A stretch of DNA of 64,000 nucleotides from the IMG/VR virus record IMGVR_UViG_3300050821_009835, positions 1 through 64,000 of that record; one strand, 5' to 3'. Both the position numbers and the translations under genes were made by a program. A model generated the notes under the pieces. The model was not told the origin of the DNA, did no database searches, and saw only the letters and a list, made by a program, of their open reading frames with translations. The first letter of the stretch is position 1, and each line of letters starts with the position of its first letter. Shown here piece by piece: positions 226-33,128 of this stretch.

Positions 226-3200
226 ATGAAAAAATCACTGTTGACAGGACTAATCCTCCTCTTAGCTTCTTTTGCGACGGCTCAAATACCAACTCCAATT
301 CGCAGTGTGTCCACCCTGCCAGTCACCTGCCATGGCGGTAATGCATCAATTTATACCGATGAAGTTGTACTTATTACAGGTGGAGTAGGCACAACTTATT
401 ATTGTTCGGCTCCAAATACTTGGACTGCTTTTTCTAGTGGTGGGGGTTCGGGTACAATTAACCCAGGAACTCAATATCAGATGCCTGTGTACGTTAGCGG
501 CGGCACCACGGTCGGGCCTAGTGCTTTTTTAAGCACAGATGCTATTGGAAACTTGAACGTTTCCACCGATATTTTCTCTCCCCTTCTTGATGGTGCAATT
601 GCCTTCGTTGATGGTAAAACATATCTGACAGCTCAATCAGTTTACGCTGCTAATCCAAATTGGTCGGGAAAAATTATCATTCCTTCTACCTTTGGCAGCC
701 CGGTTAATTGGACAACGGATCCTTATGCCAATACAGCAACGGTTGCAGTTCCCACCGTTACGGTGACTGGAACGAGTTGTTTAACCAAAATCCCAAATAA
801 CATGTACGAGGAAGTGCAACTATTCGAGGCCGACTCTAGCGGAAGTATCGTAGCGAGTGCTCCAGTTGTCTCCTCAACGAAAGGTAATGGTTCCACTTGT
901 TATAGTGTCACTGTTCCTACTGGGGCAATAATTGGTGGATTACAGGAAGGCTTCATTTTTGCGGAAGCATGTCTCACCAGCCCGTGTTCGCCATTTACAC
1001 CAACACTTCAATCAATAGGATCAGCAGAAGCAACTTTCACAGCAGCTGGGACTCTAGCTAATCTAAATTCTACGACTTCATCTACTGGATCCGGAGTTCA
1101 ACCTATTGCTGTGGATGCAGGCCTTCAGATGATAGGCACTGACATTTATCTAGAAGGAGTAAATTACGTTGTTAACGCCCCAGTAGTTCTTGGAAATCCT
1201 GGATTAATGCGCGGCAATGCCGTCGGGAACGGGGCAGGTGGAACCGTGGTACAAGCGGGTACTTCATTGCCCGCACCAGTACCTGTTGCACCAGCTCCCA
1301 AAGGTCTGCTTGTAACTGGAGGGAGTGGCACTTTAAATAACTATCTCACAGTTGAGACAGCGGTTACTTGGGGTTTGACGAGTCCTTATAACACAGTTCT
1401 ATCAATCAGCCGTGCTCAAACCTTTGGTCCATTTACATCTACATTGACTCAAGTTGAGTTGATGCAGCCCTCCCCGCCATTTCTTCCGAACCCGTGGACT
1501 CCATCTATGACATATTGGATTGGGGCAACTGTGGATGATGAAAACAACTTGAATACAACTGGCCCTTGTCTATGGAAATTGACCGCAATTTCGAGCGGGA
1601 GTTTCAATTATACCACTGCAGCATCAAATTTCTTTCCTAGTTGTACATCAGGAACGCCGGGTTCTACCACTACAACAGATGGAATTGCAACGTGGACTTT
1701 ACAGATGGTGTCTAAAAACGTGGCGGCTCAAGCATACAATGCTGGGGATGAAGTCTGGGATTCAACACATCACGTTTTTCAGCAAGCACAAACAGCGTTT
1801 ACTTCAAATGGCTCACCAACTTATCGCCCTTTATTTGCTGCCGTTTCCACAGGTGACAATGGTTTGTGGGCTAATATAGGAAAGAATGTTATCCCCCATC
1901 CAGGAATAGTGTTCTATGCTCAATCTGGCTCGTCTAGCTCCGGTTCTTACAGTGGGTTAGCGGCGGTAGAAAGTTCTCCTGTTTTTGTTAATTCTGGCTG
2001 CACGAACTTTTTCACCGCTGTCGCAACATGTGGCCTGGGGCAGACACAGGCCACGGTGTTCATTTCTGCAACTGGGGCAAACACTGCTGCTCCTAGCAAC
2101 CTAACGCTTTCTGCAACTGCTTGTCCTCAGGGTTTGACCTGCGGGAACCTCTCGGCGACGATCTACTATGTTCAGATGATGTGGGGCACACCGCTTGGAT
2201 TGACCCCGCCCTTTGCCGAGGCGACGGTTAGCGGATTGTCGAACGGTCAGGGCATTCTGGTTACGCCGCCTTCGATAGCATCTGCCCCACCTGAAGCGAC
2301 CTGCTACAGCCTGGGCACAAACGATTCATCAGCTGGCGGGAGTTTGGCTGAGATGATGGAGCCGCCCGACGGCTTCAATGTTATTGCTGGTACCGGAGGC
2401 TCTTCTCAATATCTGAACGGCCTTCAGCATGGTCAGTGCATTCCACTTGGCGAGACAGCCGTAATTGTGAATGACCAGCCTAACTCCCAAGCCTTCGGCT
2501 TTGCCACCCTAAAAATTCCGGGTTCTCCGCTGCCCACGGTCAATACAACAGGCAACATGATTTCCCTGGGTAGTGTTGATCCACTTGCGCCCAGTGTACT
2601 TTTGGGTAGCAATTATTATTCACGGATCAGCGATCTAACTCTGGAAGCGAGCCCAGTTGGGTTAAACCACGCCGCTCCTTATACTGGTCTATTATTCAAC
2701 TCAAGTGCCCAAGAACAGAGCGGCCCTTTTCATGTTCAATTCAACGATTCAGGCTCCTACGACTACTATGCTAAAGGTCCAGATGCTCAAAATAGCAGCA
2801 TGGGAGATGATCACGATACAGGGATCCCTAACGACGGTAAAGAGTGTGTTGTTATTGATACAGTTGGTGCATTTCGTGGGGTATTCGGTGGTAGCATGTG
2901 CGGAGGTACGCAAGGTGCTCAGTATTCCAATCGGAACGCGATTCACGCTTACACTCCTCTTTGGTCCAACTTTGGTGCTATGCAGATCAATATGCAAAGT
3001 GTCATTGCGGAAGGTGCAGTAGATGCTTTTGAATGTTCTAATTGTAACTTGGTTGTTCTTATTGATGCACTTACTACTTCCACAACTGGCCGCCATGTTC
3101 TTGATTTAGCTCGCTTTGACGAAGGTACCTACAATTGGAGTGTTGACGGTGCTTCAGCTGGTGGTGCTGGTGTGTGTGCAATTCGTGATGATACTTTGAA

Positions 3201-5115
3201 CGACGGTGCTTGCCTTACTACGGTCACCAAAATTGGTAAATGCTCCGCTGGCAATGTGGCTGATGTGGCAAGCGCGTATGAATCGCTTGATTGTCCTGGT
3301 GATCCTGGTGTACCTAATCAATTTTACGCTGGTTTTACTGTAGGTACTACGGCTCAATTTGGATTTAGTCAATCTGGAGCTGGCTTGTTTAATGGAGCAA
3401 CAGTCACTGGCAACAGTACTGCTAGTTTTTCTCCTTTCTTAATTACAGGTAACCCAGTACCACCAGGGGGAACAGGTGCGACAGCTTACCCTCAGCTTTA
3501 TTTTAATCAAACTGGAAACACGCCTCCTACAAGTTTTAGCACGGGGGGTACATTGTTGGGTTTCAACCTACCCTCTGGCTTCGTTGGAGATACTATTGAA
3601 CTTCACTTTAATGGTGGTCCAGTTATCTTTAAAGTGGATTACCAGGGGAATACAACAGCAAACACTGTACAGTCTTCTGAGTATAATATCAATGGGACTA
3701 CCACAAGTTACGTAAACTGCCCACAGCCTAACAATGCAATCTGTTCTTCTGCTCTTAGTGGTACGGAAACACCCCTGTACATAGGAACTTCTGGCACTAG
3801 TATAACAATTCTGGGAGCAACAACTCCATTGGTGTACTACATTGCTGGCCAGTACCAAACTATCAACACTACGCTGACGATCCCAAATTGTGGCAGCCAG
3901 CCCTGCTGGACTACACCTGCGGGAGAAACCGAGATCTTCATCTTTGCTCTCTTGGATACAACAAATTGGGCATCCATCCCGCTGGCGGATATTGCTATTA
4001 CCACTTGCCCATTGTTGATTTCCTATGTCCCGCCACCGAACTGTGCAGCAGCAAGTTCCACCAATCTACAATTCTTTTTCAATCTCGGAACGAATCAGAT
4101 GATGGCTTGCAACGGTGCGGGAAGTTGTGGAACATTCTCCAACTTCACGGCTAAGGCTGCCATCTTGTTGGGCGTTGCCATGGTGAGCACTACGCCGACA
4201 GTAGATGGCGTGGTAGGTATGCCTTTCAATATGGACCCCACTTACATCTATGAGAATTTTGGGGACGGTTCAAGCGGATCGAAGGTTTTGACCTCTGGTA
4301 CTACCACTCAAGATGGAGTGTTTAAATACTCCAATTTCAGCATGTCAAACGCAACCTTGCAACATACTCAGGTGGCAGGCAGCGTTAACACACCAGGTCT
4401 TTTAGTCTATAGTCAGACCCCCGTTATTCTAGCGGATGCACAAGGAGCCTCCACTATCAACGTTAATGGATTATCTCTGGCGGGGCCAACTGGAACAGCG
4501 GGAACATGCACGACTTCTAACTCTGCATTTGGACGTTCTGGGTCAGGAGGAGGATCTGGCGGAGCGAGCAGCACCAACGCTGGATGCAAAGGTGAAGCTC
4601 ACTACTCTTGGGGATTTCAGGTGGCAGGAGGTGGAGGAGCAGGCACCGCAGGTTCCCCAGGGACAGCAGGTCAGTCCGGTCAATCATGGAATACGGGTTG
4701 GGCGGCAGGTGGTGTCGACTTACAGCCAATGTCATTGGAATATTACGCAGATGGATTTGGTAGCCCCGGCGCAGCAGGTGCTGGCGTATCTGCGGGCGGT
4801 ACGGGCGGTAATGGTGGGACTGGTGGAGGAGTCGCGGTCATCAAAACACCTTCGATCAACGTCGTGTCCGGTTCAACCATGTCAGCAAACGGAACTGTTG
4901 GAACCATTGGGACTACTTCTACGACTAGTGGTGGTTGTGGCGGTGGGGGTGGGGGAGGTACGGCGGGTTACATTGCCGGCTTTAGTGTAAATGGCGTTGC
5001 CGGGATTACGGCTTCAGGTGCAATTGCAGTGACTACTTGTACTGGTCTCTCCCCAGAATCAAGCAACGGTGGAGCTGGTGGAGCTGGGCATGTAGTAGCT
5101 GTTCGAGTACGTTAA
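226..5115 (+). CDS. 1629-aa Gly/Thr/Ser-rich protein with N-terminal signal peptide; putative tail spike/fibre-like or surface adhesin
   Basis: MKKSLLTGLILLLASFATAQ looks like a Sec signal. W-x-x-x-x-x-Y-x-x-G segments (PWTPSMTYWIGATV) resemble carbohydrate-binding modules. Central region is beta-helix-like (SRISDLTLE..TGLLFN). C-terminus has a Gly-rich GGxGG tract typical of phage tail proteins. Confidence 0.55.
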   Translation: MKKSLLTGLILLLASFATAQIPTPIRSVSTLPVTCHGGNASIYTDEVVLITGGVGTTYYCSAPNTWTAFSSGGGSGTINPGTQYQMPVYVSGGTTVGPSAFLSTDAIGNLNVSTDIFSPLLDGAIAFVDGKTYLTAQSVYAANPNWSGKIIIPSTFGSPVNWTTDPYANTATVAVPTVTVTGTSCLTKIPNNMYEEVQLFEADSSGSIVASAPVVSSTKGNGSTCYSVTVPTGAIIGGLQEGFIFAEACLTSPCSPFTPTLQSIGSAEATFTAAGTLANLNSTTSSTGSGVQPIAVDAGLQMIGTDIYLEGVNYVVNAPVVLGNPGLMRGNAVGNGAGGTVVQAGTSLPAPVPVAPAPKGLLVTGGSGTLNNYLTVETAVTWGLTSPYNTVLSISRAQTFGPFTSTLTQVELMQPSPPFLPNPWTPSMTYWIGATVDDENNLNTTGPCLWKLTAISSGSFNYTTAASNFFPSCTSGTPGSTTTTDGIATWTLQMVSKNVAAQAYNAGDEVWDSTHHVFQQAQTAFTSNGSPTYRPLFAAVSTGDNGLWANIGKNVIPHPGIVFYAQSGSSSSGSYSGLAAVESSPVFVNSGCTNFFTAVATCGLGQTQATVFISATGANTAAPSNLTLSATACPQGLTCGNLSATIYYVQMMWGTPLGLTPPFAEATVSGLSNGQGILVTPPSIASAPPEATCYSLGTNDSSAGGSLAEMMEPPDGFNVIAGTGGSSQYLNGLQHGQCIPLGETAVIVNDQPNSQAFGFATLKIPGSPLPTVNTTGNMISLGSVDPLAPSVLLGSNYYSRISDLTLEASPVGLNHAAPYTGLLFNSSAQEQSGPFHVQFNDSGSYDYYAKGPDAQNSSMGDDHDTGIPNDGKECVVIDTVGAFRGVFGGSMCGGTQGAQYSNRNAIHAYTPLWSNFGAMQINMQSVIAEGAVDAFECSNCNLVVLIDALTTSTTGRHVLDLARFDEGTYNWSVDGASAGGAGVCAIRDDTLNDGACLTTVTKIGKCSAGNVADVASAYESLDCPGDPGVPNQFYAGFTVGTTAQFGFSQSGAGLFNGATVTGNSTASFSPFLITGNPVPPGGTGATAYPQLYFNQTGNTPPTSFSTGGTLLGFNLPSGFVGDTIELHFNGGPVIFKVDYQGNTTANTVQSSEYNINGTTTSYVNCPQPNNAICSSALSGTETPLYIGTSGTSITILGATTPLVYYIAGQYQTINTTLTIPNCGSQPCWTTPAGETEIFIFALLDTTNWASIPLADIAITTCPLLISYVPPPNCAAASSTNLQFFFNLGTNQMMACNGAGSCGTFSNFTAKAAILLGVAMVSTTPTVDGVVGMPFNMDPTYIYENFGDGSSGSKVLTSGTTTQDGVFKYSNFSMSNATLQHTQVAGSVNTPGLLVYSQTPVILADAQGASTINVNGLSLAGPTGTAGTCTTSNSAFGRSGSGGGSGGASSTNAGCKGEAHYSWGFQVAGGGGAGTAGSPGTAGQSGQSWNTGWAAGGVDLQPMSLEYYADGFGSPGAAGAGVSAGGTGGNGGTGGGVAVIKTPSINVVSGSTMSANGTVGTIGTTSTTSGGCGGGGGGGTAGYIAGFSVNGVAGITASGAIAVTTCTGLSPESSNGGAGGAGHVVAVRVR

Positions 5116-5283
5116 AAAGAACTTCTAACTTATTGTTAGGTGTACAAGATGAAGCGTCTGGTGACATTGGCTCACGGGTTGCTTTTACTGGTTACAACTG
5201 CTAGCACGGGCAGCGATAGAGAAGGCCGAGCAAGACCTTCGCAAGCTTCCAGCGTTTATCAACCCAAGTAAGAAGGGGGTTTT

Positions 5284-5700
5284 ATGAAGCTGCTGACCGT
5301 AGTTCTGTTCGTTCTATTTACTGCATGTTTATCTCCCGCCCAAACTGGACCGCAGAGAAGCCGTTTGCCGATAACTTGGGTTCAGTGTCAAACCTGCCCT
5401 CCTATCGAAATACCAACGGCTGTTAGTGACGGGGATTTTGTATTTATTGCGCTGCACTGCCCGTACGAACACTGCGGTTTACCAGAATTCAATTACACCA
5501 ACCGTCTCCATGCGGGAATAAAATTTGGGGAACTTGGCCCTCCTGTCGATTCTGATGATTCCCACGCATATCAGTTTTTTATGACGTGGGTAGCACAAAC
5601 TGGTTTAATGAAAGTGTATATTCCGGTTCCGGTCAGCGGGATTCGGTATGAAGCGGTTATCGAAGTTACGACGCCGACGGCGGTGGGCACCAACCCATAA
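5284..5700 (+). CDS. Hypothetical exported protein
   Basis: Signal-peptide-like N-terminus MKLLTVVLFVLFTACLSPAQ; RBS-like GAAGGGGG upstream. Confidence 0.55.
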   Translation: MKLLTVVLFVLFTACLSPAQTGPQRSRLPITWVQCQTCPPIEIPTAVSDGDFVFIALHCPYEHCGLPEFNYTNRLHAGIKFGELGPPVDSDDSHAYQFFMTWVAQTGLMKVYIPVPVSGIRYEAVIEVTTPTAVGTNP

Positions 5701-5738
5701 GAGGAAATAACGCGCAAAGAACGCAAACCTTCCGAGTA

Positions 5739-6905
5739 TTGATAACTGTGTCACTGATCACTCAACGCCCACAGCATTTAAATAGCGTCATTGGACAAGA
5801 ACGTGCTATTAAGGTTCTTCGAGCTGTTCTTCATAGTGAGAAATTCCTTTTACGAGGATTTATTTTTTCTGGCCTCACAGGAAGCGGAAAAACATCTGTC
5901 GCTTATCTTGCATCTCGTGCTTTAATGTGTGCTGGTCGCAGTCCAGAGGGCTGTGACTCCTGCCCCTCCTGTAAAACAATTGCTAATCAAGGCATTGATG
6001 CCCATCCTGACTTTATGGAAATAGCTGCAGCAGCTAAACCTGGAGTGGAAGCTGCTCGAGATATCCTATTGACTGCGGAGTCCCTCCCTGTCTTGGGGAA
6101 ACGGCGCGTGGTTATGATTGACGAAGCGCACTGTTTAAGTCCGGAAGCGTGGAAGGTCTATCTAAAACCTCTAGAACTGATTAACAACGATGCGATTTTT
6201 ATTTTTGTAACCAATCAAGAGAGACAGATTCCGGCAGAAATTCATGGCCGCTGTTGTCGGCTTAAATTTGGCAAAGTGGACGAAGAGACCCTTCTGGGCT
6301 TTCTTGTTAATGTCGCCTCAGCTAATCAGATCCAATACGAATTGGACGCTCTGAAGTTAATCTCTCGCTCTGCAAAGGGCATTGTACGAGAAGCATTGAG
6401 TGTTCTGGACATTTGCGCAGCAATAGGCACGGTAACTAAGGAACTCGCCATCAATGCCATCTACGATGATCTAGAAGATACAGCGTTAAATATCTACTTA
6501 CGTATGGCTGCCAAAGATCAGAAAAGCGCGGTTGAGATCGCAGATAATGCCTGTAAAACAGAATCTCCGATTCGACTAATTGAATCATTGTTTGCAACTT
6601 ATGCCAAGTGCGTTTATCGCCCGGAGTCACCAGGGCAGATCACTATTCGCGATAGCTTTCGGGACATTTGTGGTATGACTCAGATTTTCTTGAAGTGGGC
6701 AACCCCCCAGCAACTCTCGGCAGATGTTGTTCCCTTGTTAGTAGTGGAGTTAATGTCTCTAGGAGAAACTTCTCGCAATTTGGATCGCATCGTTAGCTTC
6801 GCTCCGCAAGACCGTTCTAAACTGGTTTCTACTCCTGTTGCACCAGGGGTCGAAACAGTAAGTAGATTCGCGGAATTAACTGGGGCAAAATCAGTTAAAC
6901 TTTAG
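5739..6905 (+). CDS. dnaX: DNA polymerase III gamma/tau-like clamp loader ATPase (probable start GTG 5748)
   Basis: RPQ..VIGQ N-terminus, Walker A GLTGSGKT, Zn motif C..CDSCPSC, DFMEIAAA, Walker B DEAH, SRC-like GRC, and G.VREALS.LD. Confidence 0.9.
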   Translation: MITVSLITQRPQHLNSVIGQERAIKVLRAVLHSEKFLLRGFIFSGLTGSGKTSVAYLASRALMCAGRSPEGCDSCPSCKTIANQGIDAHPDFMEIAAAAKPGVEAARDILLTAESLPVLGKRRVVMIDEAHCLSPEAWKVYLKPLELINNDAIFIFVTNQERQIPAEIHGRCCRLKFGKVDEETLLGFLVNVASANQIQYELDALKLISRSAKGIVREALSVLDICAAIGTVTKELAINAIYDDLEDTALNIYLRMAAKDQKSAVEIADNACKTESPIRLIESLFATYAKCVYRPESPGQITIRDSFRDICGMTQIFLKWATPQQLSADVVPLLVVELMSLGETSRNLDRIVSFAPQDRSKLVSTPVAPGVETVSRFAELTGAKSVKL

Positions 6906-6972
6906 TATTTAAATCAGTTGGAGGGAGCCCGCATTGATTTTAGAATTTGGCCCGGTGGAAAAACTAAAGGGA

Positions 6973-8058
6973 ATGAATTGGGTGGCTCTGGAACTCAGAT
7001 CAGAACGTACGATTGAACCCACCATGCGAAGAGTTGGAAACAAGATATCAGGGATTTTCCGAAACGATCCAATTGAGATCTTTATACCCATAACTAAACG
7101 CGACTTAGACATTTTTGAGATGGGAACGATGAATCTGATCTTTGCTCGTTCCACAAATCTCAATGCCTTGTTTCGTTTAATGACCGTTACAGGAGTTGTA
7201 CAATTTCTCACAGAAGGAGAAACTAAACGCCATAAAGCTATTGAAATTTCTGACGATTATGTTCAGGGGTTGATCATTGAAGCCGAAAAATTATACGAGA
7301 CTTTGGGTGAAGGCATTGAGGTTGGAAGTTTTGTTCGCATATTAAACGGTGAAATGCGGGATTTCTGTGGGACAGTAGAAGTCATCGACGCAGGCCGAGC
7401 CATTATTCGTATCAGTTTAAAAACTAAGACCTGCTTAAACGAAACACCTGTAAAGAATTTACTTAATCTCTCCCAAGTTCCTAAGGAACAACGTGTCTGG
7501 TACTATGGATCCCTGGTGGATCAATTAGTTGCAGACAAAGACGCGGATGGGCTTGCATTGATTGCAGAAGACCTCCCTAATGGAAAAACAGAGGAGACAA
7601 TTTCTGAATTTCCAGAATTTTTCGAGGCAACCGATGAAGCAAAACGTCATACTCGGCAGCGAACGGTGACCGCATTTGTGAAGAAACTGATTTTATTAGA
7701 TAAGATCCATGAGCCAATGGAAATTGCTAAGAAAGTTGTTGCTGCTCTTAAAACAGGAGACATTAAAGCACCAAAGAATATATTCATTGGATATTGCATT
7801 ATAAAAGACAACTTGATGAAACTGTACTTCAAGAATATCGATCCCACTCTCAATAATTATCGGGATGTGATCCACAAGTACGGGCGTAAGTACAAATTCA
7901 GTGCGCAGGATATCTTCAATTTGGATCTATCTCTGGGAATACCTATTCAAAGCCAAGAGATTTGTAAAGACGGTCGCTCTCGTGAAGCTCGTATGAAGGC
8001 TTCAAAACAGGCTTTGAAAAAGCAAGCGAAAGTAAAAGTAAAAATCGCAGTATCATAG
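6973..8058 (+). CDS. NusG-family (NGN+KOW) transcription factor paralog with ~200-aa C-terminal extension
   Basis: NGN-like N-terminus (WVALEL..EIFIP..LIFAR..TGVVQFL) and KOW motif IEVGSFVRILNGEMRDFCGTVEVID. Start moved to ATG 6973, which has an AAGGGA RBS. Confidence 0.75.
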   Translation: MNWVALELRSERTIEPTMRRVGNKISGIFRNDPIEIFIPITKRDLDIFEMGTMNLIFARSTNLNALFRLMTVTGVVQFLTEGETKRHKAIEISDDYVQGLIIEAEKLYETLGEGIEVGSFVRILNGEMRDFCGTVEVIDAGRAIIRISLKTKTCLNETPVKNLLNLSQVPKEQRVWYYGSLVDQLVADKDADGLALIAEDLPNGKTEETISEFPEFFEATDEAKRHTRQRTVTAFVKKLILLDKIHEPMEIAKKVVAALKTGDIKAPKNIFIGYCIIKDNLMKLYFKNIDPTLNNYRDVIHKYGRKYKFSAQDIFNLDLSLGIPIQSQEICKDGRSREARMKASKQALKKQAKVKVKIAVS

Positions 8059-8073
8059 AACGAGGAGAAACAC

Positions 8074-8373
8074 ATGAAAGCTATTTTCTTGCTTGACCGT
8101 TTGGATGAAACGGGTAAGGTTGTAGAGGAAAATGTTAGAGCATTGGAAATACTACCATCCCAATTTCAGTTAAAAGAGACAGAGGAATTCCTGACATGGC
8201 TGTGTTTTCCCGTGGGGGATCAATCTAATCTTGTCACCGCAAAGTTTGTACCCTTAGTGGCTTTTCCCGTTGGTCTAAAGAGGAAGCCAGCAATACCCGA
8301 TGCTGCTTTGAAGGTGAAGAAGCTGGCACCAGCAAAGAAAGTGCTTACAAAGAAGAAAGCTGCAAAGAGTTAA
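8074..8373 (+). CDS. Hypothetical protein with Lys-rich tail
   Basis: ORF with GAGGAG RBS. Confidence 0.6.
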   Translation: MKAIFLLDRLDETGKVVEENVRALEILPSQFQLKETEEFLTWLCFPVGDQSNLVTAKFVPLVAFPVGLKRKPAIPDAALKVKKLAPAKKVLTKKKAAKS

Positions 8374-8376
8374 TTT

Positions 8377-8973
8377 ATGGCAATTAAAGTCCAGCGCACA
8401 CATGGTCTCCGGGCCACTATGGAGAAGTGTGGCTGTAAGGCAACTCAAGAGTATGAAGATTCCTCATTGTTAAACAAAATTGAGGATACAACGATTTATA
8501 CTCCTTGTCAAAAACACAAGATTTCGGCAGAAGCAGCTGAGACCTTCAAAGAAGTTCTCCTAGAAGTATTGGAAACTGCGCAGATGCAGGCGCGTAAATT
8601 TCCAGATCCTAGTGTGACCCCAAGCAAATCCATTGGTCATTCCATTGAAGATGTTGCAGCGGCGCAATCTTCGGGAGCGGTCTCTGCTACAAGAACACCT
8701 ATCAATAGAAGCGGTTCAGGTTCTCGTTTATCTGTTCGACGTTCCAGCGATAGCGGCTCATTACCGCGTGTTTCTACAGCAGTAAGGAATGCCAGGGCAT
8801 CCGGTAGTGCAACCTCCATCGATGCTGAACTTGCTAGAACCCCAGATTTTGCAACACCGGGCAGAATTGGCCCAATAAGCCGTGAAAAGGTACAAGAAGC
8901 TATAGATGAAGCTGCTGAGTCAGGGGAGCCAGTTACGCCGCTGGATGTTATTTTAAGTGTGAATGACGAGTAG
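8377..8973 (+). CDS. Hypothetical protein, Cys-containing N-terminus and Ser/Arg low-complexity middle
   Basis: 198-aa ORF starting 3 nt after the previous stop. Confidence 0.6.
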   Translation: MAIKVQRTHGLRATMEKCGCKATQEYEDSSLLNKIEDTTIYTPCQKHKISAEAAETFKEVLLEVLETAQMQARKFPDPSVTPSKSIGHSIEDVAAAQSSGAVSATRTPINRSGSGSRLSVRRSSDSGSLPRVSTAVRNARASGSATSIDAELARTPDFATPGRIGPISREKVQEAIDEAAESGEPVTPLDVILSVNDE

Positions 8974-9283
8974 TGCGACGAAACTTATTGGACAAAGGTG
9001 TTATAGTCCAAGGATTACCGCTGTCGATGGATTTACCACAGAAATCCTCTAATTCTTCCAAAATGTGAAACCAGGGAGTTATAACAAAGCCGATCAATGG
9101 CGGCTCTAAACGTGATCCTATTGCAATCGCAGGTTTGACGTGAGTTTCTGGCCCGAAATCCTCTAATCCAAGGCGAGCAGCAAGGTCAGTATAAGCACGG
9201 ACAACTGTTATCTCCTCGATATCGCAAAGGACTTCACAGCTGAATCGGCTACAAACCTCGTCTATAGCCCTGTGGAATTTCAT
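8948..9283 (-). CDS. Hypothetical protein
   Basis: ORF directly downstream of the DUF6011 gene on the same strand. Confidence 0.5.
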   Translation of the reverse strand: MKFHRAIDEVCSRFSCEVLCDIEEITVVRAYTDLAARLGLEDFGPETHVKPAIAIGSRLEPPLIGFVITPWFHILEELEDFCGKSIDSGNPWTITPLSNKFRRTTRHSHLK

Positions 9284-9288
9284 TTACT

Positions 9289-10116
9289 TTAGAAACTCTC
9301 CACTGGCTCGTTGCCATAGACTGCTTGATAGCGACGCTCGTTCATCTGCTCTTCTGCACGAAGTGAAGACATTTCTGCTTCTCGTTCGTCGATAACTTCT
9401 TGACGGCCAGCCTCATCGCCCCAGAAGCGATCGTCTTCAATCGGATTGGCGGTGAACCGTTTGGTCCAGAACTGAACAGCGGCTCCCTCGGTCAGTTGTT
9501 CACCGATCCCGAATGGGTCGTAGAACTTCTCAGTTTCCATCGCCTTCAGAAAAGAAACCATGCGTGAGATAACGGCCTTGTCATCTTTCACCGGGGTCGT
9601 GCGTGTTTCATACGAAGTGGCTTCAAAGTGGAAACCTGTCTGCACCGGGGCTGCATTTGGGTCAGCGTACACTGATCCAGGCGTTCTAACAGCTGCAACA
9701 GCTTCACGAGCAGCAATCTGGTCAATCTTCTCCCAAGCGTACTTCTCGGCACAATCAGGACCCATGCCGGCATGAATCGAGGCGGGGACTGTCAGCTCGC
9801 GACCACAACGGCAGCAGCGACCTTCTTTCATCGCATAAGCCATACCAGCTTCCATGGGGTTGCGAGCGATACGATTGATTGCGTTCTGAAGAGCTTCCAG
9901 ACGTTTCGGGTCAAATTCGTTACGGAACCGCTTCCACAACATTACGCGGTTGTCGGCGGAGAGGAATGCAATGCCTTCATAGCGTGAACCAGACTTGCGC
10001 GACAGGATGGACTTGCCTTTGAAGGAGCCGGAATCTTCTCCTTCGTTGTTGTTAATGCTCAGTGTGCGATATTCACCGTTGCTGTAAACCAGCGTGTATC
10101 GTCCATTCTGAATCAT
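9289..10116 (-). CDS. DUF6011-like Zn-finger protein (phage)
   Basis: Motif CCRCGRELTVPASIHAGMGPDCAEK matches the CxxCGRxLTxxxSxxxGxGPxC pattern; GGAGGG RBS. Confidence 0.75.
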   Translation of the reverse strand: MIQNGRYTLVYSNGEYRTLSINNNEGEDSGSFKGKSILSRKSGSRYEGIAFLSADNRVMLWKRFRNEFDPKRLEALQNAINRIARNPMEAGMAYAMKEGRCCRCGRELTVPASIHAGMGPDCAEKYAWEKIDQIAAREAVAAVRTPGSVYADPNAAPVQTGFHFEATSYETRTTPVKDDKAVISRMVSFLKAMETEKFYDPFGIGEQLTEGAAVQFWTKRFTANPIEDDRFWGDEAGRQEVIDEREAEMSSLRAEEQMNERRYQAVYGNEPVESF

Positions 10117-10164
10117 TGTTTCCCTCCATCAATAAACTACGCAGACAGGGAGAAAAACGGGTAT

Positions 10165-10170
10165 TATAAT
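10165..10170 (+). promoter_or_regulatory. sigma70-like -10 (TATAAT) 7 nt before ATG 10178
   Basis: TATAAT-tggcaca-ATG with no Shine-Dalgarno in between. Confidence 0.45.
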
Positions 10171-10177
10171 TGGCACA

Positions 10178-10345
10178 ATGATTTTCCCAGTAAAACTCGC
10201 TTTGTTAATCGTCACAGGATGGCTGATTGGGTCGGTTGTCTTTGCGTTAACGGGTGATCAGTTTATCGCAGTTGCGAGTTTCCTGCTATGGGCGGTTTTG
10301 AATCGGAAAGCAGTATTAAACGAAGAGGGTGAACCCAATGCATAA
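10178..10345 (+). CDS. Small membrane protein (55 aa; not in the ORF track)
   Basis: MIFPVKLALLIVTGWLIGSVVFALTGDQFIAVASFLLWAVLNRK..., with two hydrophobic segments. Confidence 0.5.
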   Translation: MIFPVKLALLIVTGWLIGSVVFALTGDQFIAVASFLLWAVLNRKAVLNEEGEPNA

Positions 10346-10580
10346 GATTGACTTACCTGTACTTCGCGGTAATAAAACAGCTTGTTACAGGTATCTTGTT
10401 GGAAATCATTCAGTGGGGATAATTTCACCCACAAGAAAAAAGCACTTGGCTACTATTGAGAAAGTCAAGAGTATGTGGACAGGGGCACCTGTTGTTCCTG
10501 ATATTCTTTACGGTCAGTACGATCGTAGAATCACTCCAGAAGAGGTCGCTAATTACATCCTTCTCATGCGTTTGGCTTGA
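10338..10580 (+). CDS. Hypothetical protein
   Basis: ATG 10338 with GAGGG RBS; overlaps the previous stop. Confidence 0.5.
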   Translation: MHKIDLPVLRGNKTACYRYLVGNHSVGIISPTRKKHLATIEKVKSMWTGAPVVPDILYGQYDRRITPEEVANYILLMRLA

Positions 10581-10625
10581 TTAATCGCATTTCGCCTTTT
10601 ACTCCCAAAGTAGAGGCGATTCACA

Positions 10626-10847
10626 ATGAGCATTCGTTGCGTGCACAGCATCCATTCTGAATGTGATATCTTCGTCCAAAAAACGGGTGGTGGCGACGTT
10701 CGCCTTCGCCTTCGAGAAAAAGACCCTGAACTCGTTTCTCCTACAGATTTTGAGCTAGAAGGTGACCCTGCACATATTGCTGAGGCACTCAGTTTTATCG
10801 TCGGGGTTTTGACAAATTTGGACGCCTTAGACAAGGAGCCAAGTTAG
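10626..10847 (+). CDS. Hypothetical protein
   Basis: ORF in plus-strand run. Confidence 0.45.
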   Translation: MSIRCVHSIHSECDIFVQKTGGGDVRLRLREKDPELVSPTDFELEGDPAHIAEALSFIVGVLTNLDALDKEPS

Positions 10848-10851
10848 TCTC

Positions 10852-11124
10852 TTGAAACAGTCTCCTATCGCCCGATTTTGCTTCTATTGCGGGCGGACAC
10901 TTTCTCGTCGAACAAAAACTCGTGATCATTTACAACCTAAGAGCAGGCATGGAAGTAGTGCTCGTTACAACATCGTGGACGCATGTCGTCCTTGCAATGC
11001 CCTAAAAGGTGCCCTCGCCCTCGAGGAATTCAGGGTGGTGATGGCATATCGAGCCGGACAAATTAAAGCTGCTAAAATGCGTTTTCCTGGGGAAATTAAA
11101 AAACCACTATCTCAAACCAAATAG
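10852..11124 (+). CDS. HNH endonuclease
   Basis: CFYCG...TRDHLQPKSRHG...NIVDACRPCNALKG. Confidence 0.85.
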   Translation: MKQSPIARFCFYCGRTLSRRTKTRDHLQPKSRHGSSARYNIVDACRPCNALKGALALEEFRVVMAYRAGQIKAAKMRFPGEIKKPLSQTK

Positions 11125-12072
11125 ATTTTTCTTCTTAGCAGCTTCTACTATACGTCGACGACGTTCCACGGCTCTTTGAACTTGAGGATGATTTACGGCT
11201 GCGCTTGCGGCTTGCTGTTGGAGTTCGCGCCAATTAGGCGGTGCATCAAACACTTCAGGGATAGAGGGAAGAGATGGAGGTGCTGTTCTTCGGAGCGGCC
11301 TGGGAGCCATACGATTCGGGAGAACAGGATCTGCGAGAGTTGGGTTGATCGCTGGCGTCAGGGTAGTCGGCAGGGCATTCAAGGATGGCCAGAGATCGGG
11401 GTGCAACGATTTAATTTTTGCAATTAGTTTAGGCCTGTTTACTCTCTTGAGCATCGAGTCGTGCTTTTCACGATAGTGGAAAATAGCTTCCGGGACAATA
11501 ACAACCTTCCAACCTCGCTTTACTATGTCAATCCAGAGATTCCAATCCTCGTAACCAATATGCTCTTTGTCGTATCCACTAAGTGCGGGGTTGTACCCTC
11601 CAACTTCCATAAGAACACTGCGTCTGATGAGAGAGCACACGGGTATGCAATTGTCCATCTTGAGTTGGTCCAAAGTGGGAGAGGACGTGTGCCAGGTGTA
11701 ATCCTTAATGCCAAAGCAAGCTGCGAAGGTGCCAACTATTCCTACCTCATCACTCATCTGAGGTACAGTCTTGCTGAGGTAATCTCTGTCAATCCAGTCA
11801 TCTGAATCCAAAGGAAGAATGAATTTCCCTGAGGATGCAGCTATGCCAGCATTTCTGGTTAGAGATAACCCTCTATTCTTCTGGGAGATTACTCGTACTC
11901 CTTTCCCCTCATAACTTCTCGCTACGGCTAAAGAATTATCAGTAGAGCCATCGTTTACTACAATAATTTCCGTGTTCCCATAATCTTGCTCCAGCGCCGA
12001 TTCAATGGCCTGAGAAAGATATTGAGCGTGGTTAAAAACCGGGATGATAATAGAAACTTTGGACATTGCCAT
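11107..12072 (-). CDS. Glycosyltransferase family 2 with Pro/Arg-rich C-terminal tail
   Basis: VSIIIPVFN..YLSQAIESAL.Q..EIIVVNDGSTD..RNAGI..ILPLDSDD..GYEDW. Confidence 0.92.
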   Translation of the reverse strand: MAMSKVSIIIPVFNHAQYLSQAIESALEQDYGNTEIIVVNDGSTDNSLAVARSYEGKGVRVISQKNRGLSLTRNAGIAASSGKFILPLDSDDWIDRDYLSKTVPQMSDEVGIVGTFAACFGIKDYTWHTSSPTLDQLKMDNCIPVCSLIRRSVLMEVGGYNPALSGYDKEHIGYEDWNLWIDIVKRGWKVVIVPEAIFHYREKHDSMLKRVNRPKLIAKIKSLHPDLWPSLNALPTTLTPAINPTLADPVLPNRMAPRPLRRTAPPSLPSIPEVFDAPPNWRELQQQAASAAVNHPQVQRAVERRRRIVEAAKKKNLFGLR

Positions 12073-26569: not shown

Positions 26570-28111
26570 TTACAGATAGAATACTGTGCCTTGCAAAGTT
26601 CCAGTCGTAGTCGTAGTCGTGGAAGAATATGTTGTCGATAGAGAGATCGTGATACCATTGGAGAAGTTTGCCAAAGCAATGGCACCTGGCGGGATACAAA
26701 ATCCTGTACCATAACCAGTAACTCCTGCAGGACCCGTGTAAACCGCAAAAGACATTATCCAGTTTGCCAATGTCGTGTTGGTTGTGTTCCAGAACTGTAA
26801 AAACAGCTGGGTTGTTGTAGTGGATGTAGCTGTAAAGAAGACGTTGAATCCATATAAGTTTCCAGCAGTCCCTTTGACGTTCGCTACACCAATGCCAGAG
26901 TGAGAACTGACAAGACTGGTTGCCGCACCCAATGAAGCATTGGGTATATTGACAGCGTTAACCGCCATAACTTCCGTGCCTGTGGGTGCAGTTCCTAGGG
27001 CGGAAATTGCAGCCGTGATGACGTTGGTCTGGTCGCAGATTGCAGTGAATACGCCATTGGTTTTGGCGTTGGTTACGCCCAAGTTCCCAACAACGTTCAC
27101 ATCCACCACGCCTGTAGCGGTTGTGGTTTGATTTGTACGGGCTAGTGTCGTCCCCATGAACAACGAGGCATTAACACCAAGGGCATTGCCAGTTGGGGCA
27201 GTGGTACCAAAAGTGTTAGGCGTACCAAGAGCCGTAGTGCCTGAGAACATGGAAGCATTAACAGTACCTGCAATTACTGCACCCGGTGTCGTGCCAAAAT
27301 TTACGGCTGCACCCAGAGCAGTTCCTGCCCAGGCTTGCAAATCAGAGTTAAGTGCACCGTGCAGATCGGTAACGGGTAAAACCATATCCCCAGTTGTGTA
27401 GGTCACTGTAGAATATGCAGTTTCAGCAATTGCCGGTAATACGCCAATCAGAGTAGCGCCCGGAGCTGCATTGTTGTTGGTGAGAGTACCAACAGCACTG
27501 ACATTGAGGGCACTGCCCGTAGCGGAAAGCGCAGTCTGCCCAGCGAATAATTCGGCATTAACAGCTTGCACATCAACCGTGACGGCTGGAGCGGTTCCCC
27601 AAACAGTTTGTCCCGAAACAAAAACATTGAGCGATGATACAGGAGGGCTTCCTGCAGTTGTAAAAGTTGCCCCGGTAATGCCCACAGTCCCGTACACAAC
27701 ACTGTTTGCATTGACGAACGAATCTGCAGCATAGCCGATTATGACGGTTCCGGTTCCAAGAATAACTGTACTCAGAAGAACCTGGAAATAGGGGATAGCT
27801 GTGAGGTTGAATTCAAAAGCAGCGTAAGTATTGTTCTGGAGATTATAGGTAGGACCGATTATGGTTGTAGTGCCGGGTGTGATGCCTTCGAGATTGAACC
27901 AATTTGTACCATCTAAAGAGCCCTGAAATGTGACTGTGCCCTGAGTGATTGTACTAGATTGTTTGAGGGTAACAATCAGTGTATTGTACGAGTAATCTTG
28001 GCTTACAAGTGAAGCCACTGTATTAAGAGTAGTGGCTTGACTCCACGTAACAAATGAAGCATTCGATTCACCAACTGATAAACTAGCTTGAATTGGGAAC
28101 TGTGATTCCAT
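26570..28111 (-). CDS. 513-aa Thr/Ala/Gly/Asn-rich modular putative virion protein
   Basis: Shares the TITQGxVTFQGxxDGTNW and GTLTNNNAAP..LPAIAETAY..GDMVLPVTDLHGAL modules with the 827-aa gene. Its stop is directly adjacent to the next ATG. Confidence 0.6.
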   Translation of the reverse strand: MESQFPIQASLSVGESNASFVTWSQATTLNTVASLVSQDYSYNTLIVTLKQSSTITQGTVTFQGSLDGTNWFNLEGITPGTTTIIGPTYNLQNNTYAAFEFNLTAIPYFQVLLSTVILGTGTVIIGYAADSFVNANSVVYGTVGITGATFTTAGSPPVSSLNVFVSGQTVWGTAPAVTVDVQAVNAELFAGQTALSATGSALNVSAVGTLTNNNAAPGATLIGVLPAIAETAYSTVTYTTGDMVLPVTDLHGALNSDLQAWAGTALGAAVNFGTTPGAVIAGTVNASMFSGTTALGTPNTFGTTAPTGNALGVNASLFMGTTLARTNQTTTATGVVDVNVVGNLGVTNAKTNGVFTAICDQTNVITAAISALGTAPTGTEVMAVNAVNIPNASLGAATSLVSSHSGIGVANVKGTAGNLYGFNVFFTATSTTTTQLFLQFWNTTNTTLANWIMSFAVYTGPAGVTGYGTGFCIPPGAIALANFSNGITISLSTTYSSTTTTTTGTLQGTVFYL

Positions 28112-30020: not shown

Positions 30021-30640
30021 GATACTGTAGAGCCCGCACTAGTAGTGATGCTTGGTTCATATGCTAATGTCGCCCAGTTTGGTGTAACAGATCCTGACCC
30101 CAAAATTACAGTAGACAATTCAGCACGGATTGCAATAAAACCCTGAGACAGGATGAGGAACGGAACATTCGTGCTCGGTACGAATGTGTAAGGGTTTGTT
30201 AACTGCGCAAAAGTTGCAGGGTTTAAAACTTGCGCAGTTGGAATTGTTATCCAGTTGGTGCCATCATAGGTCCCCTGAAAAGTCACTGCACCTTGAGTGA
30301 TGGTTGTAGTCTGGTCGAGTGCTATTAAATAAGCTGGAGCGCCTGCAAAAGCACCAATGGTTGCGGTGCCTGTAGCGTATTGAAGTGTGTTAGAACCTGT
30401 GCCGCTATTCCATGCAGCACCCGTTTTGAACTGAATTCCAGGAAAGGCAAGCGAGTTTCCCGATTGATCGGATTGGGCAGCAACTAACTGTCCGTTAGCT
30501 GGAGAGGGTGCTGTGGTGCTATAAACTGCACCATCCTGAATCGCAGCTGCAGGAGCGGCAGCTCCAGGAACTCCCAGAACTGCATTACCCGCGATATCGT
30601 TTAGCCCAAATACTGTGATGCCAGTGTATAAATTAGGCAT
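28157..30640 (-). CDS. 827-aa Thr/Ala/Gly-rich internally duplicated putative virion protein
   Basis: Two tandem ~190-aa units (FPGxQFKTG..PAYLxALDQTTTITxGAVTFQGTYD..VLNP..TNPY..PVTDLHGAL). C-terminal domain (TTLIPLLSI..KNGTL) is related to that of the 447-aa gene. Confidence 0.65.
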   Translation of the reverse strand: MPNLYTGITVFGLNDIAGNAVLGVPGAAAPAAAIQDGAVYSTTAPSPANGQLVAAQSDQSGNSLAFPGIQFKTGAAWNSGTGSNTLQYATGTATIGAFAGAPAYLIALDQTTTITQGAVTFQGTYDGTNWITIPTAQVLNPATFAQLTNPYTFVPSTNVPFLILSQGFIAIRAELSTVILGSGSVTPNWATLAYEPSITTSAGSTVSGTLSNNNAVPSNNNLGVLPAIAETAYTTATYTTGDMVLPVTDLHGALNTDVQAVGGTAVVTAASGVQMVGIEGHGAATLDSTVGSGTAPTNALAVSGIYSTTEPAPTATQATAVQQDQSANLLNFPGVQFKTGTVWAGGSTPGGTFQYPTGTTTQGQLSGAPAYLVALDQTTTITAGAVTFQGTYDNVNWTTIPVAQVLNPNTYAPLTNPYTLQASTNIAFLILAQGYVGIRTDVSTTFTGSGSVTPYWASLATEPTNLPLSGTTIVDGTLTNNNAAPTASLIGVLPAIAETAYTTVTYTTGDLVLPVTDLHGALNEDLQAVAGVQLGATGVTAFGSAPAAVNVVGVNASIFQGTAAISAANPLFTEISDGTNAMGAMANFGTGPGAVKAVNANVSLFSGTTALTNTGGALNVEIAGSSGNTTVVGNLTNNNAAPTTTNIGSLDYIATASAEAYTQGDQVLATTSLGGAVRMVPVDEANASSLSYYSFDNAATQVAVGTTLIPLLSIETNSSSIIFLLRGINVGSNGTIALVRVVKNGTLTGATFTGTEGNMKTDIVASAITAGTVVFSGYVGTVNIQQALLQAIAAGTPGDKFSICGQSITGTAQMLASIQWSEQSAAL

Positions 30641-30696
30641 GTTTTCTCTCCTAAACTATTGGCAGATCTTCTCTATCTATTAAACAGGAAGTGATT

Positions 30697-33022: not shown

Positions 33023-33049
33023 TGCGCAGTCCTTCGGCTCAAGTAATTT

Positions 33050-33096: not shown

Positions 33097-33115
33097 GATT
33101 TTCATTATCCGCTCG

Positions 33116-33121: not shown

Positions 33122-33128
33122 TAACTGA

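What the first reader, a model, noticed from the sequence alone, without database searches (positions are those of the whole stretch)
6973..8058. Phage NusG paralog with a long unique C-terminal extension, a possible dedicated antiterminator
Seen: NGN+KOW in the first ~165 aa, then ~200 extra residues with a basic tail. Established: specialised NusG paralogs (RfaH, UpxY, LoaP, TaA) antiterminate long polysaccharide or secondary-metabolite operons. Inference: it supports transcription through the 22-kb glycan/structural run that ends ~3 kb away, or it competes with host NusG.
Basis: partly seen in the sequence, partly recalled or inferred. Interest (0 to 1): 0.6.

Follow-up and report, generated by a model that had tools for sequence, protein, structure and literature searches.

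The report
Jumbo-phage NusG-like factor, orphan tail

Summary
Window 6934-8058 (+) is a real 374-aa gene. Its start is TTG 6934, not ATG 6973.

- **NusG fold.** Residues 10-119 superpose on E. coli NusG NGN (Z 10.0, rmsd 2.2 Å). Residues 127-181 form a KOW barrel.
- **Weak sequence signal.** TIGR00922 scores 25-31 bits against a cut-off of 135.7, and Pfam gives nothing for this protein.
- **Orphan extension.** Residues 186-374 comprise an α-hairpin, an acidic disordered linker, a basic helical domain and a Lys-rich helix. No fold or sequence relative was found. In 1.84 billion representatives this module occurs only behind this same NGN-KOW unit.
- **Phage-only family.** It has more than 180 clusters in viral and metagenome contigs of up to about 460 kb and none in 185,579 prokaryote genomes. 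The one cultured member is Tunturiibacter phage Tunturi_5 gp25, annotated "transcription antiterminator".
- **Link to the glycan run is not supported.** The gene follows the clamp-loader gene in 25 of 29 relatives. The 22-kb island is absent near relatives and from Tunturi_5.

Most likely it is a clade-wide elongation or antitermination factor that occupies the NusG site of host RNA polymerase. No phage polymerase was detected. The tail probably binds nucleic acid. Function is inferred, not shown. I rate it a new variant of a known kind.

The parts
6920..6924 (+). Shine-Dalgarno-like GGAGG, 9 nt before the TTG start
   Evidence: Read directly from the sequence.
6934..8058 (+). CDS of the NusG-like protein: 374 aa, TTG start, stop at 8056-8058
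   Evidence: ORF list. Identical 374-aa database call P0002. The N-terminal 13 residues are conserved in the family. More than 180 clusters of full-length relatives.
6934..7308 (+). Residues 1-125: short N-terminal strand and helix, then the NGN domain (β-α-β fold, helix 107-122)
   Evidence: AF2 model, pLDDT mostly above 88. VIA-align against E. coli NusG NGN on RNAP (6c6u_N): Z 10.0, rmsd 2.2 Å over 96 residues. RfaH NGN (6c6t_D): Z 8.7.
7312..7482 (+). Residues 127-183: KOW β-barrel
   Evidence: phmmer and hmmsearch alignments to NusG KOW domains. VIA-align against 3c4s_A: Z 8.5, rmsd 1.2 Å over 55 residues. Foldseek hit to the T. thermophilus NusG C-terminal domain 1nz9. KOW5_SPT5 hit in 10 of 57 relatives.
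7510..7572 (+). Residues 193-213: two short helices (α-hairpin) directly after KOW, ending in the near-invariant E-D-L motif (E212, D213, L214)
   Evidence: Helices 193-202 and 204-213, with mean pLDDT about 95-96 over residues 181-210. Conservation.
7573..7653 (+). Residues 214-240: acidic linker (predicted disordered over 218-236), variable in length and sequence
   Evidence: pLDDT below 50 for 218-236. pI 4.5. Gapped, variable columns in the alignment.
7654..7938 (+). Residues 241-335: basic all-α domain of unknown fold, with invariant R241, Q242, T246, A247, P261, K281, Y287, K291, G317 and K321-F322-S323
   Evidence: pLDDT 92-98. pI 9.8. No match in PDB by HMM, Foldseek (best E 1.5) or VIA wide (best Z 5.3). 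ESM Atlas TM at most 0.34. Found only fused behind this NGN-KOW unit.
7939..8055 (+). Residues 336-374: basic tail with a Lys-rich terminal helix (350-373)
   Evidence: pI 10.5, with 11 K+R in 39 residues. In relatives this position holds a Cys/His zinc-ribbon-like tail (58 of 138), a basic tail (56 of 138) or, in P0163, two HTH-like repeats.
5739..6905 (+). Context: clamp-loader (DnaX-like AAA+) gene, 28 nt upstream on the same strand
   Evidence: Pfam DNA_pol3_delta2 at 5.8e-20 and DNAX_ATPase_lid. Adjacent upstream in 25 of 29 related loci, including Tunturi_5 gp24.
8074..8973 (+). Context: two small same-strand ORFs (8074-8373, 8377-8973), 15 nt and 3 nt after the preceding stop, probably co-transcribed
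   Evidence: ORF list. No Pfam family. The 8377 homologue recurs downstream in 9 related loci.

Best explanation
**What it is.** The gene encodes a phage-specific member of the NusG/Spt5 superfamily. It is a core gene of a clade of soil jumbo phages, and Tunturiibacter phage Tunturi_5 is the cultured example.

**Proposed mechanism (all inferred).**
1. The gene is expressed with the replication genes.
2. Its NGN domain docks on the β' clamp helices and β gate loop of the host RNA polymerase elongation complex. This is the site used by NusG, RfaH, UpxY and LoaP.
3. Docking closes the clamp, which reduces pausing and termination. It also shuts out host NusG, and with it NusG-assisted Rho silencing of foreign DNA.
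4. Long phage transcription units are then read through.
5. The family-specific C-terminal module, held on a flexible acidic linker, supplies the phage-specific part. Most likely it contacts DNA or RNA, or anchors a partner.

**Scope.** The factor serves the phage genome in general, not the neighbouring glycan island.

**Shown versus inferred.** The fold, the domain architecture, the conservation, the phage restriction and the synteny are shown. RNAP binding, antitermination, exclusion of NusG and Rho, and nucleic-acid binding by the tail are inferred.
For: - **Fold.** The top 30 PDB Foldseek hits are all NusG/Spt5/RfaH. NGN gives Z 10.0 at rmsd 2.2 Å against RNAP-bound E. coli NusG, and KOW gives Z 8.5.
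- **Sequence.** 57 of 57 relatives hit TIGR00922 weakly and 54 of 57 hit UpxY. Divergent relatives still hit UpxY or NusG in their N-terminal half.
- **Core-gene status.** There are more than 180 clusters and 28 IMG/VR loci. It is one of 87 ORFs shared with Tunturi_5, at 45% identity, and is present once per genome.
- **Phage-restricted.** No relative turned up in 185,579 prokaryote genomes.
- **Host RNAP as target.** PF04997, PF00623, PF00562 and PF00940 give no hit in this record or in the complete Tunturi_5 genome. Tunturi_5 carries a σ70-family factor.
- **Tail as nucleic-acid binder.** The helical domain has pI 9.8 and the tail pI 10.5. Relatives carry interchangeable basic, Cys/His or HTH-like tails at the same position.
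- **Placement.** The gene is tightly spaced with the clamp-loader gene.
- **Possible expression.** A soil metatranscriptome from another study holds a 307-nt contig, at least 99% identical, at 6983-7289.
Against: - There is no functional data for any family member.
- Sequence similarity to NusG is far below every curated cut-off.
- RNAP-contact residues could not be checked.
- Very divergent phage RNA polymerases, such as the phiKZ type, can escape Pfam models, and this record is only about 78% complete.
- The RNA-library contigs may derive from DNA carried over in the library.
- Constant adjacency to replication genes could point to a role other than transcription.
Confidence: 0.55

Rival explanations
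1. Dedicated antiterminator of the neighbouring 22-kb glycan/structural run (11107-33022, − strand), acting like UpxY or RfaH on one long operon.
For: Part of the run does encode sugar-nucleotide enzymes, methyltransferases and glycosyltransferases. Known specialised NusG paralogues control such operons (PMC7819879, PMC11685472). UpxY is the second-best NCBIfam match.
Against: The island's genes are absent within 10 kb of the gene in 29 relatives and absent from the complete Tunturi_5 genome, yet the factor is conserved. Homologues of the genes flanking the island lie close together in L012, L013 and L026, so the island is a variable insertion. The gene is on the opposite strand beyond the 3' end of the run. 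ops-like motifs occur at chance level (34 found, 33.9 expected). The leader fold is not significant (z -1.93).
Confidence: 0.07
2. Host-takeover inhibitor. The NGN domain occupies the NusG site on host RNAP, or the KOW domain titrates a NusG partner, mainly to cripple host transcription or transcription-translation coupling. It would give phage transcripts no positive processivity benefit.
For: The evidence is the same fold and the same likely host-RNAP target as the best explanation. Many phage RNAP binders are inhibitors (general knowledge). The gene sits in a replication-type, probably early or middle, gene block.
Against: An inhibitor would not need a conserved 190-residue extra module with nucleic-acid-binding-type tails. 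All characterised NusG paralogues promote elongation (PMC7819879).
Confidence: 0.15
3. The factor links transcription to replication, or works on DNA or RNA without RNAP. The NusG scaffold plus the basic module would bridge the replisome (clamp or clamp loader) and nucleic acid, as the T4 sliding clamp activates late transcription. Alternatively the KOW-type barrel serves a ribosome or RNA role.
For: The gene is next to the clamp-loader gene in 25 of 29 loci. In Tunturi_5 it lies in a block with the sliding clamp, primase and exonuclease. It carries a conserved E-D-L motif before a flexible linker and a basic C-terminal module. KOW-like barrels also occur in ribosomal proteins.
Against: No clamp-binding motif was recognised and the C-terminus is variable. 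Gene adjacency in phage early and middle modules is weak evidence. The NGN domain superposes closely on RNAP-bound NusG.
Confidence: 0.12

Closest known systems
Housekeeping bacterial NusG (TIGR00922; e.g. E. coli NusG, PDB 6c6u)
   Same: Two-domain NGN + KOW architecture in the same order. The NGN superposes at Z 10.0, rmsd 2.2 Å. NusG is the best NCBIfam hit for every family member.
   Different: - It scores 25-31 bits against a cut-off of 135.7 and shares about 11-20% identity.
- It is phage-encoded.
- It has a 13-residue N-terminal addition and a 189-residue C-terminal module that NusG lacks.
- Binding sites for Rho and S10 on the KOW domain were not tested.
UpxY (NF033644), the capsule-operon antiterminators of Bacteroides
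   Same: It is a specialised NusG paralogue associated with glycan loci. UpxY is the second-best model, hit by 54 of 57 members, and the best for several divergent relatives.
   Different: - It scores 19-33 bits against a cut-off of 100.
- It is not the first gene of the operon and is not linked to glycan genes in relatives.
- No UpxZ-like partner was identified.
- It carries the extra C-terminal module.
RfaH (TIGR01955) and LoaP (NF033641)
   Same: The NGN fold matches RfaH on RNAP (6c6t_D Z 8.7, 8phk_P Z 8.8). The concept is the same: a paralogue that excludes NusG and resists termination.
   Different: - Only 2 of 57 members hit the RfaH model and 5 of 57 hit LoaP, all weakly.
- ops-like elements occur at chance level.
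- The KOW domain is modelled as a β-barrel with a separate α-hairpin after it, not as a fold-switching helical CTD.
Short phage NusG/RfaH-like proteins (PHROG 6386 'transcription antiterminator'; BFVD entries A0A6J5PZH6 and A0A6J5MAV8)
   Same: These are phage-encoded NGN-KOW proteins. They are structural matches at E 1e-6 to 1e-5.
   Different: They are 146-241 aa long and lack the C-terminal module. The match to phrog_6386 has E 0.06, so this is a separate family.
Tunturiibacter phage Tunturi_5 gp25 (XOB77468.1, PP885688.1)
   Same: It is a true family member: 45% identity over 91% of the length, and the same position after the clamp-loader gene gp24. Its phage is a cultured jumbo myovirus of an acidobacterial host (PMC11924767).
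   Different: It is annotated only as 'transcription antiterminator'. The word search of the paper found neither 'antiterminat' nor 'NusG' in its text. Its phage has 58.4% GC, against about 46% here, and lacks this window's glycan island.

Membership tests
NusG/Spt5 superfamily | N-terminal NGN domain fold | tested here: met
   VIA-align gives Z 10.0, rmsd 2.2 Å over 96 of 98 residues against E. coli NusG NGN (6c6u_N). Spt5 NGN (3lpe_A) gives Z 8.4, rmsd 1.9 Å. The top 30 Foldseek hits are all from this family.
NusG/Spt5 superfamily | KOW β-barrel following the NGN domain | tested here: met
   Residues 127-181 give Z 8.5, rmsd 1.2 Å against 3c4s_A. Sequence alignments to NusG KOW domains have E 0.002-0.25. 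Foldseek hits the NusG C-terminal domain 1nz9.
NusG/Spt5 superfamily | Pfam PF02357 (NusG) or PF00467 (KOW) at the gathering threshold | tested here: not met
   This protein gives no hit. Only 1 of 57 relatives hits PF02357, at E 0.066. Ten of 57 hit KOW5_SPT5 at E 3e-4 or weaker.
NusG/Spt5 superfamily | Binding to the β' clamp helices of RNA polymerase | tested here: inconclusive
   The complex prediction of NGN with E. coli β' 215-365 returned no verdict. That is no evidence either way, and biochemistry is needed.
Housekeeping NusG (TIGR00922 equivalog) | Score above the curated cut-off of 135.7 bits | tested here: not met
   It scores 30.9 bits (361-aa form) and 25.2 bits (residues 1-185), and 24.5 bits in the genome scan.
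UpxY (NF033644) | Score above the cut-off of 100 bits | tested here: not met
   It scores 20-23 bits here. The best among the divergent relatives scanned is 33.2 bits.
UpxY (NF033644) | Encoded as the first gene of the polysaccharide operon it controls | tested here: not met
   The gene is on the + strand, about 3 kb beyond the 3' end of the − strand glycan run. It is linked to the clamp-loader gene, not to glycan genes, in relatives.
RfaH (TIGR01955) | Model score, and an ops recruitment element in the target leader | tested here: not met
   Only 2 of 57 relatives hit the model, with best E 0.012. The ops consensus with up to 2 mismatches gives 34 matches against 33.9 expected, and none lies in the 33023-33128 leader.
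RfaH (TIGR01955) | C-terminal domain that switches between an α-hairpin and a β-barrel | not testable with these tools
   The model shows a confident β-barrel plus a separate α-hairpin at 193-213. A single static prediction cannot show fold switching or autoinhibition.
LoaP (NF033641) | Score above the cut-off of 125 bits | tested here: not met
   Five of 57 relatives hit it, with best E 4.3e-5. One divergent relative scores 19 bits.
PHROG 6386 (phage 'transcription antiterminator') | Significant profile match | tested here: not met
   E 0.06, 14.1 bits.

The most novel reading that the evidence does not exclude
The orphan basic C-terminal module turns a NusG scaffold into an adaptor of a new type. 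While riding on host RNA polymerase, it would grip DNA, RNA or the phage replisome (the clamp and clamp-loader genes are its constant neighbours). Transcription of a 300-kb phage genome would then be coupled to replication or marked as 'self'. The α-hairpin after the KOW domain could act as an RfaH-like autoinhibitory lid. This would be a previously undescribed mode of NusG-family specialisation, and it could be tested in the cultured Tunturi_5 and Tunturiibacter pair.
Probability: 0.12. Interest if true: 0.8.

Novelty: new variant of a known kind. Interest (0 to 1): 0.5.

Why it matters
NusG is the only transcription factor conserved in all domains of life. Its specialised paralogues (RfaH, UpxY, LoaP) are models for how horizontally acquired DNA escapes Rho silencing. 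Searches of open-access papers found no described phage-encoded NusG-type factor.

This family shows that a whole clade of soil jumbo phages keeps its own NusG-like protein as a core gene and has added a conserved module of unknown fold. These phages probably infect Acidobacteriota, a dominant and poorly tractable soil phylum. If the protein reprogrammes host RNA polymerase, it would be a new route of phage takeover and a new structural solution for targeting a NusG paralogue. Because one member belongs to a cultured phage-host pair, the idea can be tested directly.

The correction matters too. The nearby glycan island is a variable insertion and should not be used to assign the factor's target.

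Tried and rejected
- **Complex prediction.** NGN (residues 1-130) with E. coli β' 215-365 returned no verdict (score 0.16, mark 0.34). It is not evidence either way. Acidobacterial RpoC references were not held.
- **ops element.** A search of the window gave matches at chance level.
- **Leader fold.** Folding the 33020-33135 leader gave two hairpins, but z was -1.93 and 12 of 200 shuffles folded as well, so it is not significant.
- **Promoter and terminator scan.** The scan of 5000-11200 found no excess over shuffles.
- **Repeated intergenic signal.** An exact 10-mer count over the intergenic regions of the whole record found no recruitment or promoter motif, only a 12-bp tandem repeat.
- **Phage RNA polymerase.** PF04997, PF00623, PF00562 and PF00940 gave no hit. 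The PF00940 search rang in no control genome, so it is uninformative.
- **Sigma factor in this record.** PF04542 gave none. The ORF at the position syntenic with Tunturi_5 gp211 has no Pfam hit.
- **C-terminal module.** No match came from the HMM against PDB, Foldseek PDB, VIA wide, the ESM Atlas by shape or by features.
- **Literature.** Searches on NusG together with huge, jumbo or phage-encoded terms returned nothing relevant. The NusG reviews do not mention phage-encoded NusG paralogues.
- **Phylogeny.** A tree against curated NusG, RfaH, UpxY and LoaP sets was not run. Per-family HMM scores were used instead.
Full report
**1. The observation**

The window holds a 374-codon ORF at 6934-8058 on the + strand. 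Three things favour the TTG at 6934:
- It is preceded by GGAGG at 6920-6924.
- It restores an N-terminal segment conserved in the relatives (consensus MILEYGD.SKLKG).
- The database gene call is the identical 374-aa protein P0002.

The record containing the window is an IMG/VR virus contig of 264,912 bp. It is linear and about 78% complete by CheckV. Its source is a soil metagenome.

**2. Is it NGN + KOW?**

Ordinary HMM thresholds would say no.
- Pfam returns no NusG or KOW hit for this protein.
- PHROG 6386 "transcription antiterminator" matches at E 0.06.
- NCBIfam nusG (TIGR00922) reaches only 30.9 bits against a cut-off of 135.7. UpxY reaches 20 bits against 100.
- Searches against PDB sequences, with the single protein and with family profiles, hit only NusG/Spt5 KOW regions, at E 0.002-0.25.

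The signal is weak but consistent. All 57 relatives tested hit nusG, 54 hit UpxY, 29 hit the mycoplasma-type NusG model, 5 hit LoaP and 2 hit RfaH. None comes near a cut-off.

Structure settles the matter.
- An AlphaFold2 model built on 57 relatives has mean pLDDT 87.2.
- Its top 30 Foldseek matches in the PDB are all NusG, Spt5 or RfaH and cover the whole of those proteins.
- Residues 10-119 match E. coli NusG NGN bound to RNA polymerase (6c6u_N) at Z 10.0, rmsd 2.2 Å over 96 residues. RfaH NGN (6c6t_D) gives Z 8.7.
- Residues 127-181 match KOW-type barrels at Z 8.5, rmsd 1.2 Å over 55 residues.

The NGN + KOW observation is therefore confirmed.

**3. The extension**

Residues 186-374 divide into four parts:
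- **α-hairpin, 193-213.** It is modelled with high confidence and ends in a near-invariant E-D-L motif.
- **Acidic linker, 214-240.** It is variable in sequence, with pI 4.5, and is predicted disordered over 218-236.
- **Basic all-α domain, 241-335.** It has pLDDT 92-98 and pI 9.8.
- **Lys-rich terminal helix, 350-373.** It lies within a tail of pI 10.5.

The module is as conserved as the NusG part. Its invariant residues include R241, Q242, T246, A247, P261, K281, Y287, K291, G317 and K321-F322-S323.

No relative of the module was found by any method:
- profile against PDB sequences: no hit;
- Foldseek against PDB: best E 1.5;
- exhaustive VIA-align over 48,161 chains: best Z 5.3, below the noise level for helical proteins;
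- ESM Atlas by shape: TM at most 0.34, and by features nothing usable.

An exhaustive profile search of 1.84 billion representatives found only 68 clusters. In nearly all full-length ones the match starts at residue 185-190, which is the same NGN-KOW-plus-module architecture. The shorter hits look like fragments. Divergent relatives keep weak UpxY or NusG hits in their N-terminal half.

At the extreme C-terminus the family carries interchangeable tails. Of 138 full-length members, 58 have a Cys/His zinc-ribbon-like tail (median length 436 aa) and 56 have a basic tail like this one. One relative, P0163, has two HTH-like repeats with weak σ70 region-4 and HTH hits. All three are typical nucleic-acid-binding elements. 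That is my main reason to infer that the C-terminus contacts DNA or RNA.

**4. Distribution**

- The word search gave 152 clusters at 90% identity with the full-length query and 182 with the extension. Identity to this protein is 48-79% among those listed. Many lie on contigs of 200-460 kb, and JGI names some of them NusG.
- IMG/VR yielded 28 loci on viral contigs of up to 463 kb.
- A scan of one genome from each of 185,579 prokaryote species found none. The family therefore appears restricted to lytic jumbo phages.
- Among 50,697 GenBank phage records, only Tunturiibacter phage Tunturi_5 has it. That phage has a 308.7-kb genome, is a myovirus, and infects an acidobacterial host from Arctic soil. 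Its gp25 is annotated "transcription antiterminator" and shares 45% identity. A word search of the paper describing it found neither "antiterminat" nor "NusG" in its text (PMC11924767).
- BFVD contains shorter phage NusG/RfaH-like proteins of 146-241 aa. These lack the module.
- Literature searches found no paper on phage-encoded NusG paralogues in jumbo or huge phages. Two NusG family reviews do not mention any.

**5. Context and the glycan hypothesis**

The gene lies 28 nt after a clamp-loader gene (5739-6905; Pfam DNA_pol3_delta2 at 5.8e-20). Two small same-strand ORFs follow after gaps of 15 nt and 3 nt. The clamp-loader gene is the upstream neighbour in 25 of 29 related loci. Homologues of 8377, 8948, 9289 (DUF6011), 10329 and the HNH gene at 10852 recur downstream.

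Part of the − strand run at 11107-33022 does encode glycan enzymes: a GDP-mannose dehydratase, epimerases, a C-methyltransferase and glycosyltransferases. Its promoter-proximal large genes have no Pfam family. Four points argue against a link to the NusG-like gene:
- None of the run's genes appears within 10 kb of the NusG-like gene in relatives, apart from a 24%-identity glycosyltransferase match in two loci.
- None has a homologue in the complete Tunturi_5 genome, which shares 87 of about 297 ORFs with this record.
- In L012, L013 and L026, homologues of the genes on the far side of the island (33129, and in L012/L013 also 34528) lie within a few kb of backbone genes from its near side. The island is therefore a variable insertion in a conserved backbone.
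- The proposed leader (33023-33128) has two hairpins, but its fold is not significant (z -1.93). ops-like motifs occur at chance frequency.

The factor is a clade-wide core gene. A role dedicated to this island is not supported.

**6. Which polymerase?**

Pfam models for β' and β of multisubunit polymerases rang in all 14 control genomes. They found nothing in this record or in the complete Tunturi_5 genome. The T7-type model found nothing either, but it rang in no control, so it is uninformative. Tunturi_5 encodes a σ70-family factor, gp211. None was recognised in this incomplete record. The large proteins shared with Tunturi_5 are annotated there as tail and baseplate proteins. These phages therefore probably use host RNA polymerase. 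The caveat is that very divergent phage polymerases can escape these models.

**7. Mechanism**

Shown:
- a NusG-fold protein, present once per genome;
- core to the clade and restricted to phages;
- fused to a conserved basic orphan module;
- encoded in a replication-gene block.

Inferred from established knowledge of NusG, RfaH, UpxY and LoaP (PMC7819879, PMC11685472):
1. The NGN domain binds the β' clamp helices and β gate loop of host elongation complexes.
2. Binding suppresses pausing and termination.
3. It also excludes host NusG, and with it Rho-mediated silencing of foreign DNA, across the long phage transcription units.
4. The C-terminal module, on its flexible acidic linker, adds nucleic-acid or partner contacts.

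I put this at about 0.55. The rivals are:
- a pure inhibitor of host NusG function (0.15);
- a replication-coupled or non-RNAP role, suggested by the constant clamp-loader neighbour (0.12);

One prediction of NGN with E. coli β' 215-365 gave no verdict and counts for nothing.

**8. Expression hint**

A soil metatranscriptome from a study other than the probable source holds seven small contigs at least 99% identical to the laid stretch 5000-10500. One is a 307-nt piece at 6983-7289, inside the NGN coding region. RNA libraries can carry DNA, so this is only a hint.

**9. Verdict**

- It is a new variant of a known kind: a NusG-superfamily protein that meets the fold criteria but none of the curated subfamily criteria, with a family-specific C-terminal module.
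- Interest is moderate (0.5). There is no functional evidence yet, but a cultured phage-host pair exists for testing.

Noticed in passing
window 11107-33022 (− strand): The 22-kb glycan and unknown-gene run looks like a variable island inserted into a conserved backbone. In L012, L013 and L026, homologues of window genes from both sides of it (10852 on one side; 33129 and, in L012/L013, 34528 on the other) lie within a few kb of each other. None of its ORFs has a homologue in Tunturi_5. It encodes a GDP-mannose 4,6-dehydratase, epimerases, a C-methyltransferase and GT2/GT6 glycosyltransferases.
   Followed up: partly
window 26570-33022 (− strand): The four promoter-proximal genes of that run (329, 447, 827 and 513 aa) have no Pfam family. 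They were not examined further, and whether they are structural or enzymatic is open.
   Followed up: no
window 226-5115 (+): This 1,629-aa protein has a signal-peptide-like N-terminus and Gly/Ser/Thr-rich repeats. It has no Pfam hit and no homologue in the related loci or in Tunturi_5. It may be a host-specific fibre or adhesin.
   Followed up: no
window 41065-41115: A perfect 12-bp tandem repeat, GATTCAAACATG in 4.2 copies, lies in an intergenic gap between 40399-41052 (+) and 41117-41698 (−). It could be an iteron or operator-like site.
   Followed up: partly
window 9289-10116 (−) and 10852-11124 (+): A DUF6011 protein (Pfam 3.5e-14) and an HNH endonuclease (1.7e-8) belong to the conserved backbone downstream of the NusG-like gene in many relatives.
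   Followed up: partly
window 33050-33095 (− strand leader of the glycan run): Two adjacent hairpins lie in the 106-nt divergent intergenic region: a 7-bp stem with a GAAA loop and a 9-bp stem. The overall fold is not significant (z -1.93).
   Followed up: yes
whole record G000 versus Tunturi_5 (PP885688.1): The two phages share 87 of about 297 ORFs at 25-72% identity, but the gene order is rearranged. In Tunturi_5 the sliding clamp, primase and exonuclease lie directly upstream of the clamp loader and the NusG-like gene. In this record their homologues sit at about 228-235 kb.
   Followed up: partly
relatives, e.g. P0008, P0009, P0011 (C-terminal ~55 aa) and P0163 (residues ~340-452): Family members swap the extreme C-terminus. 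Some carry a Cys/His zinc-ribbon-like tail, which JGI once named 'ribosomal protein L32'. Others carry a plain basic tail or two HTH-like repeats.
   Followed up: partly
window 5000-10500: A soil metatranscriptome run from a different study holds seven contigs, at least 99% identical, scattered over this stretch on both strands. A near-identical phage was therefore present, and possibly active, in another soil sample.
   Followed up: partly
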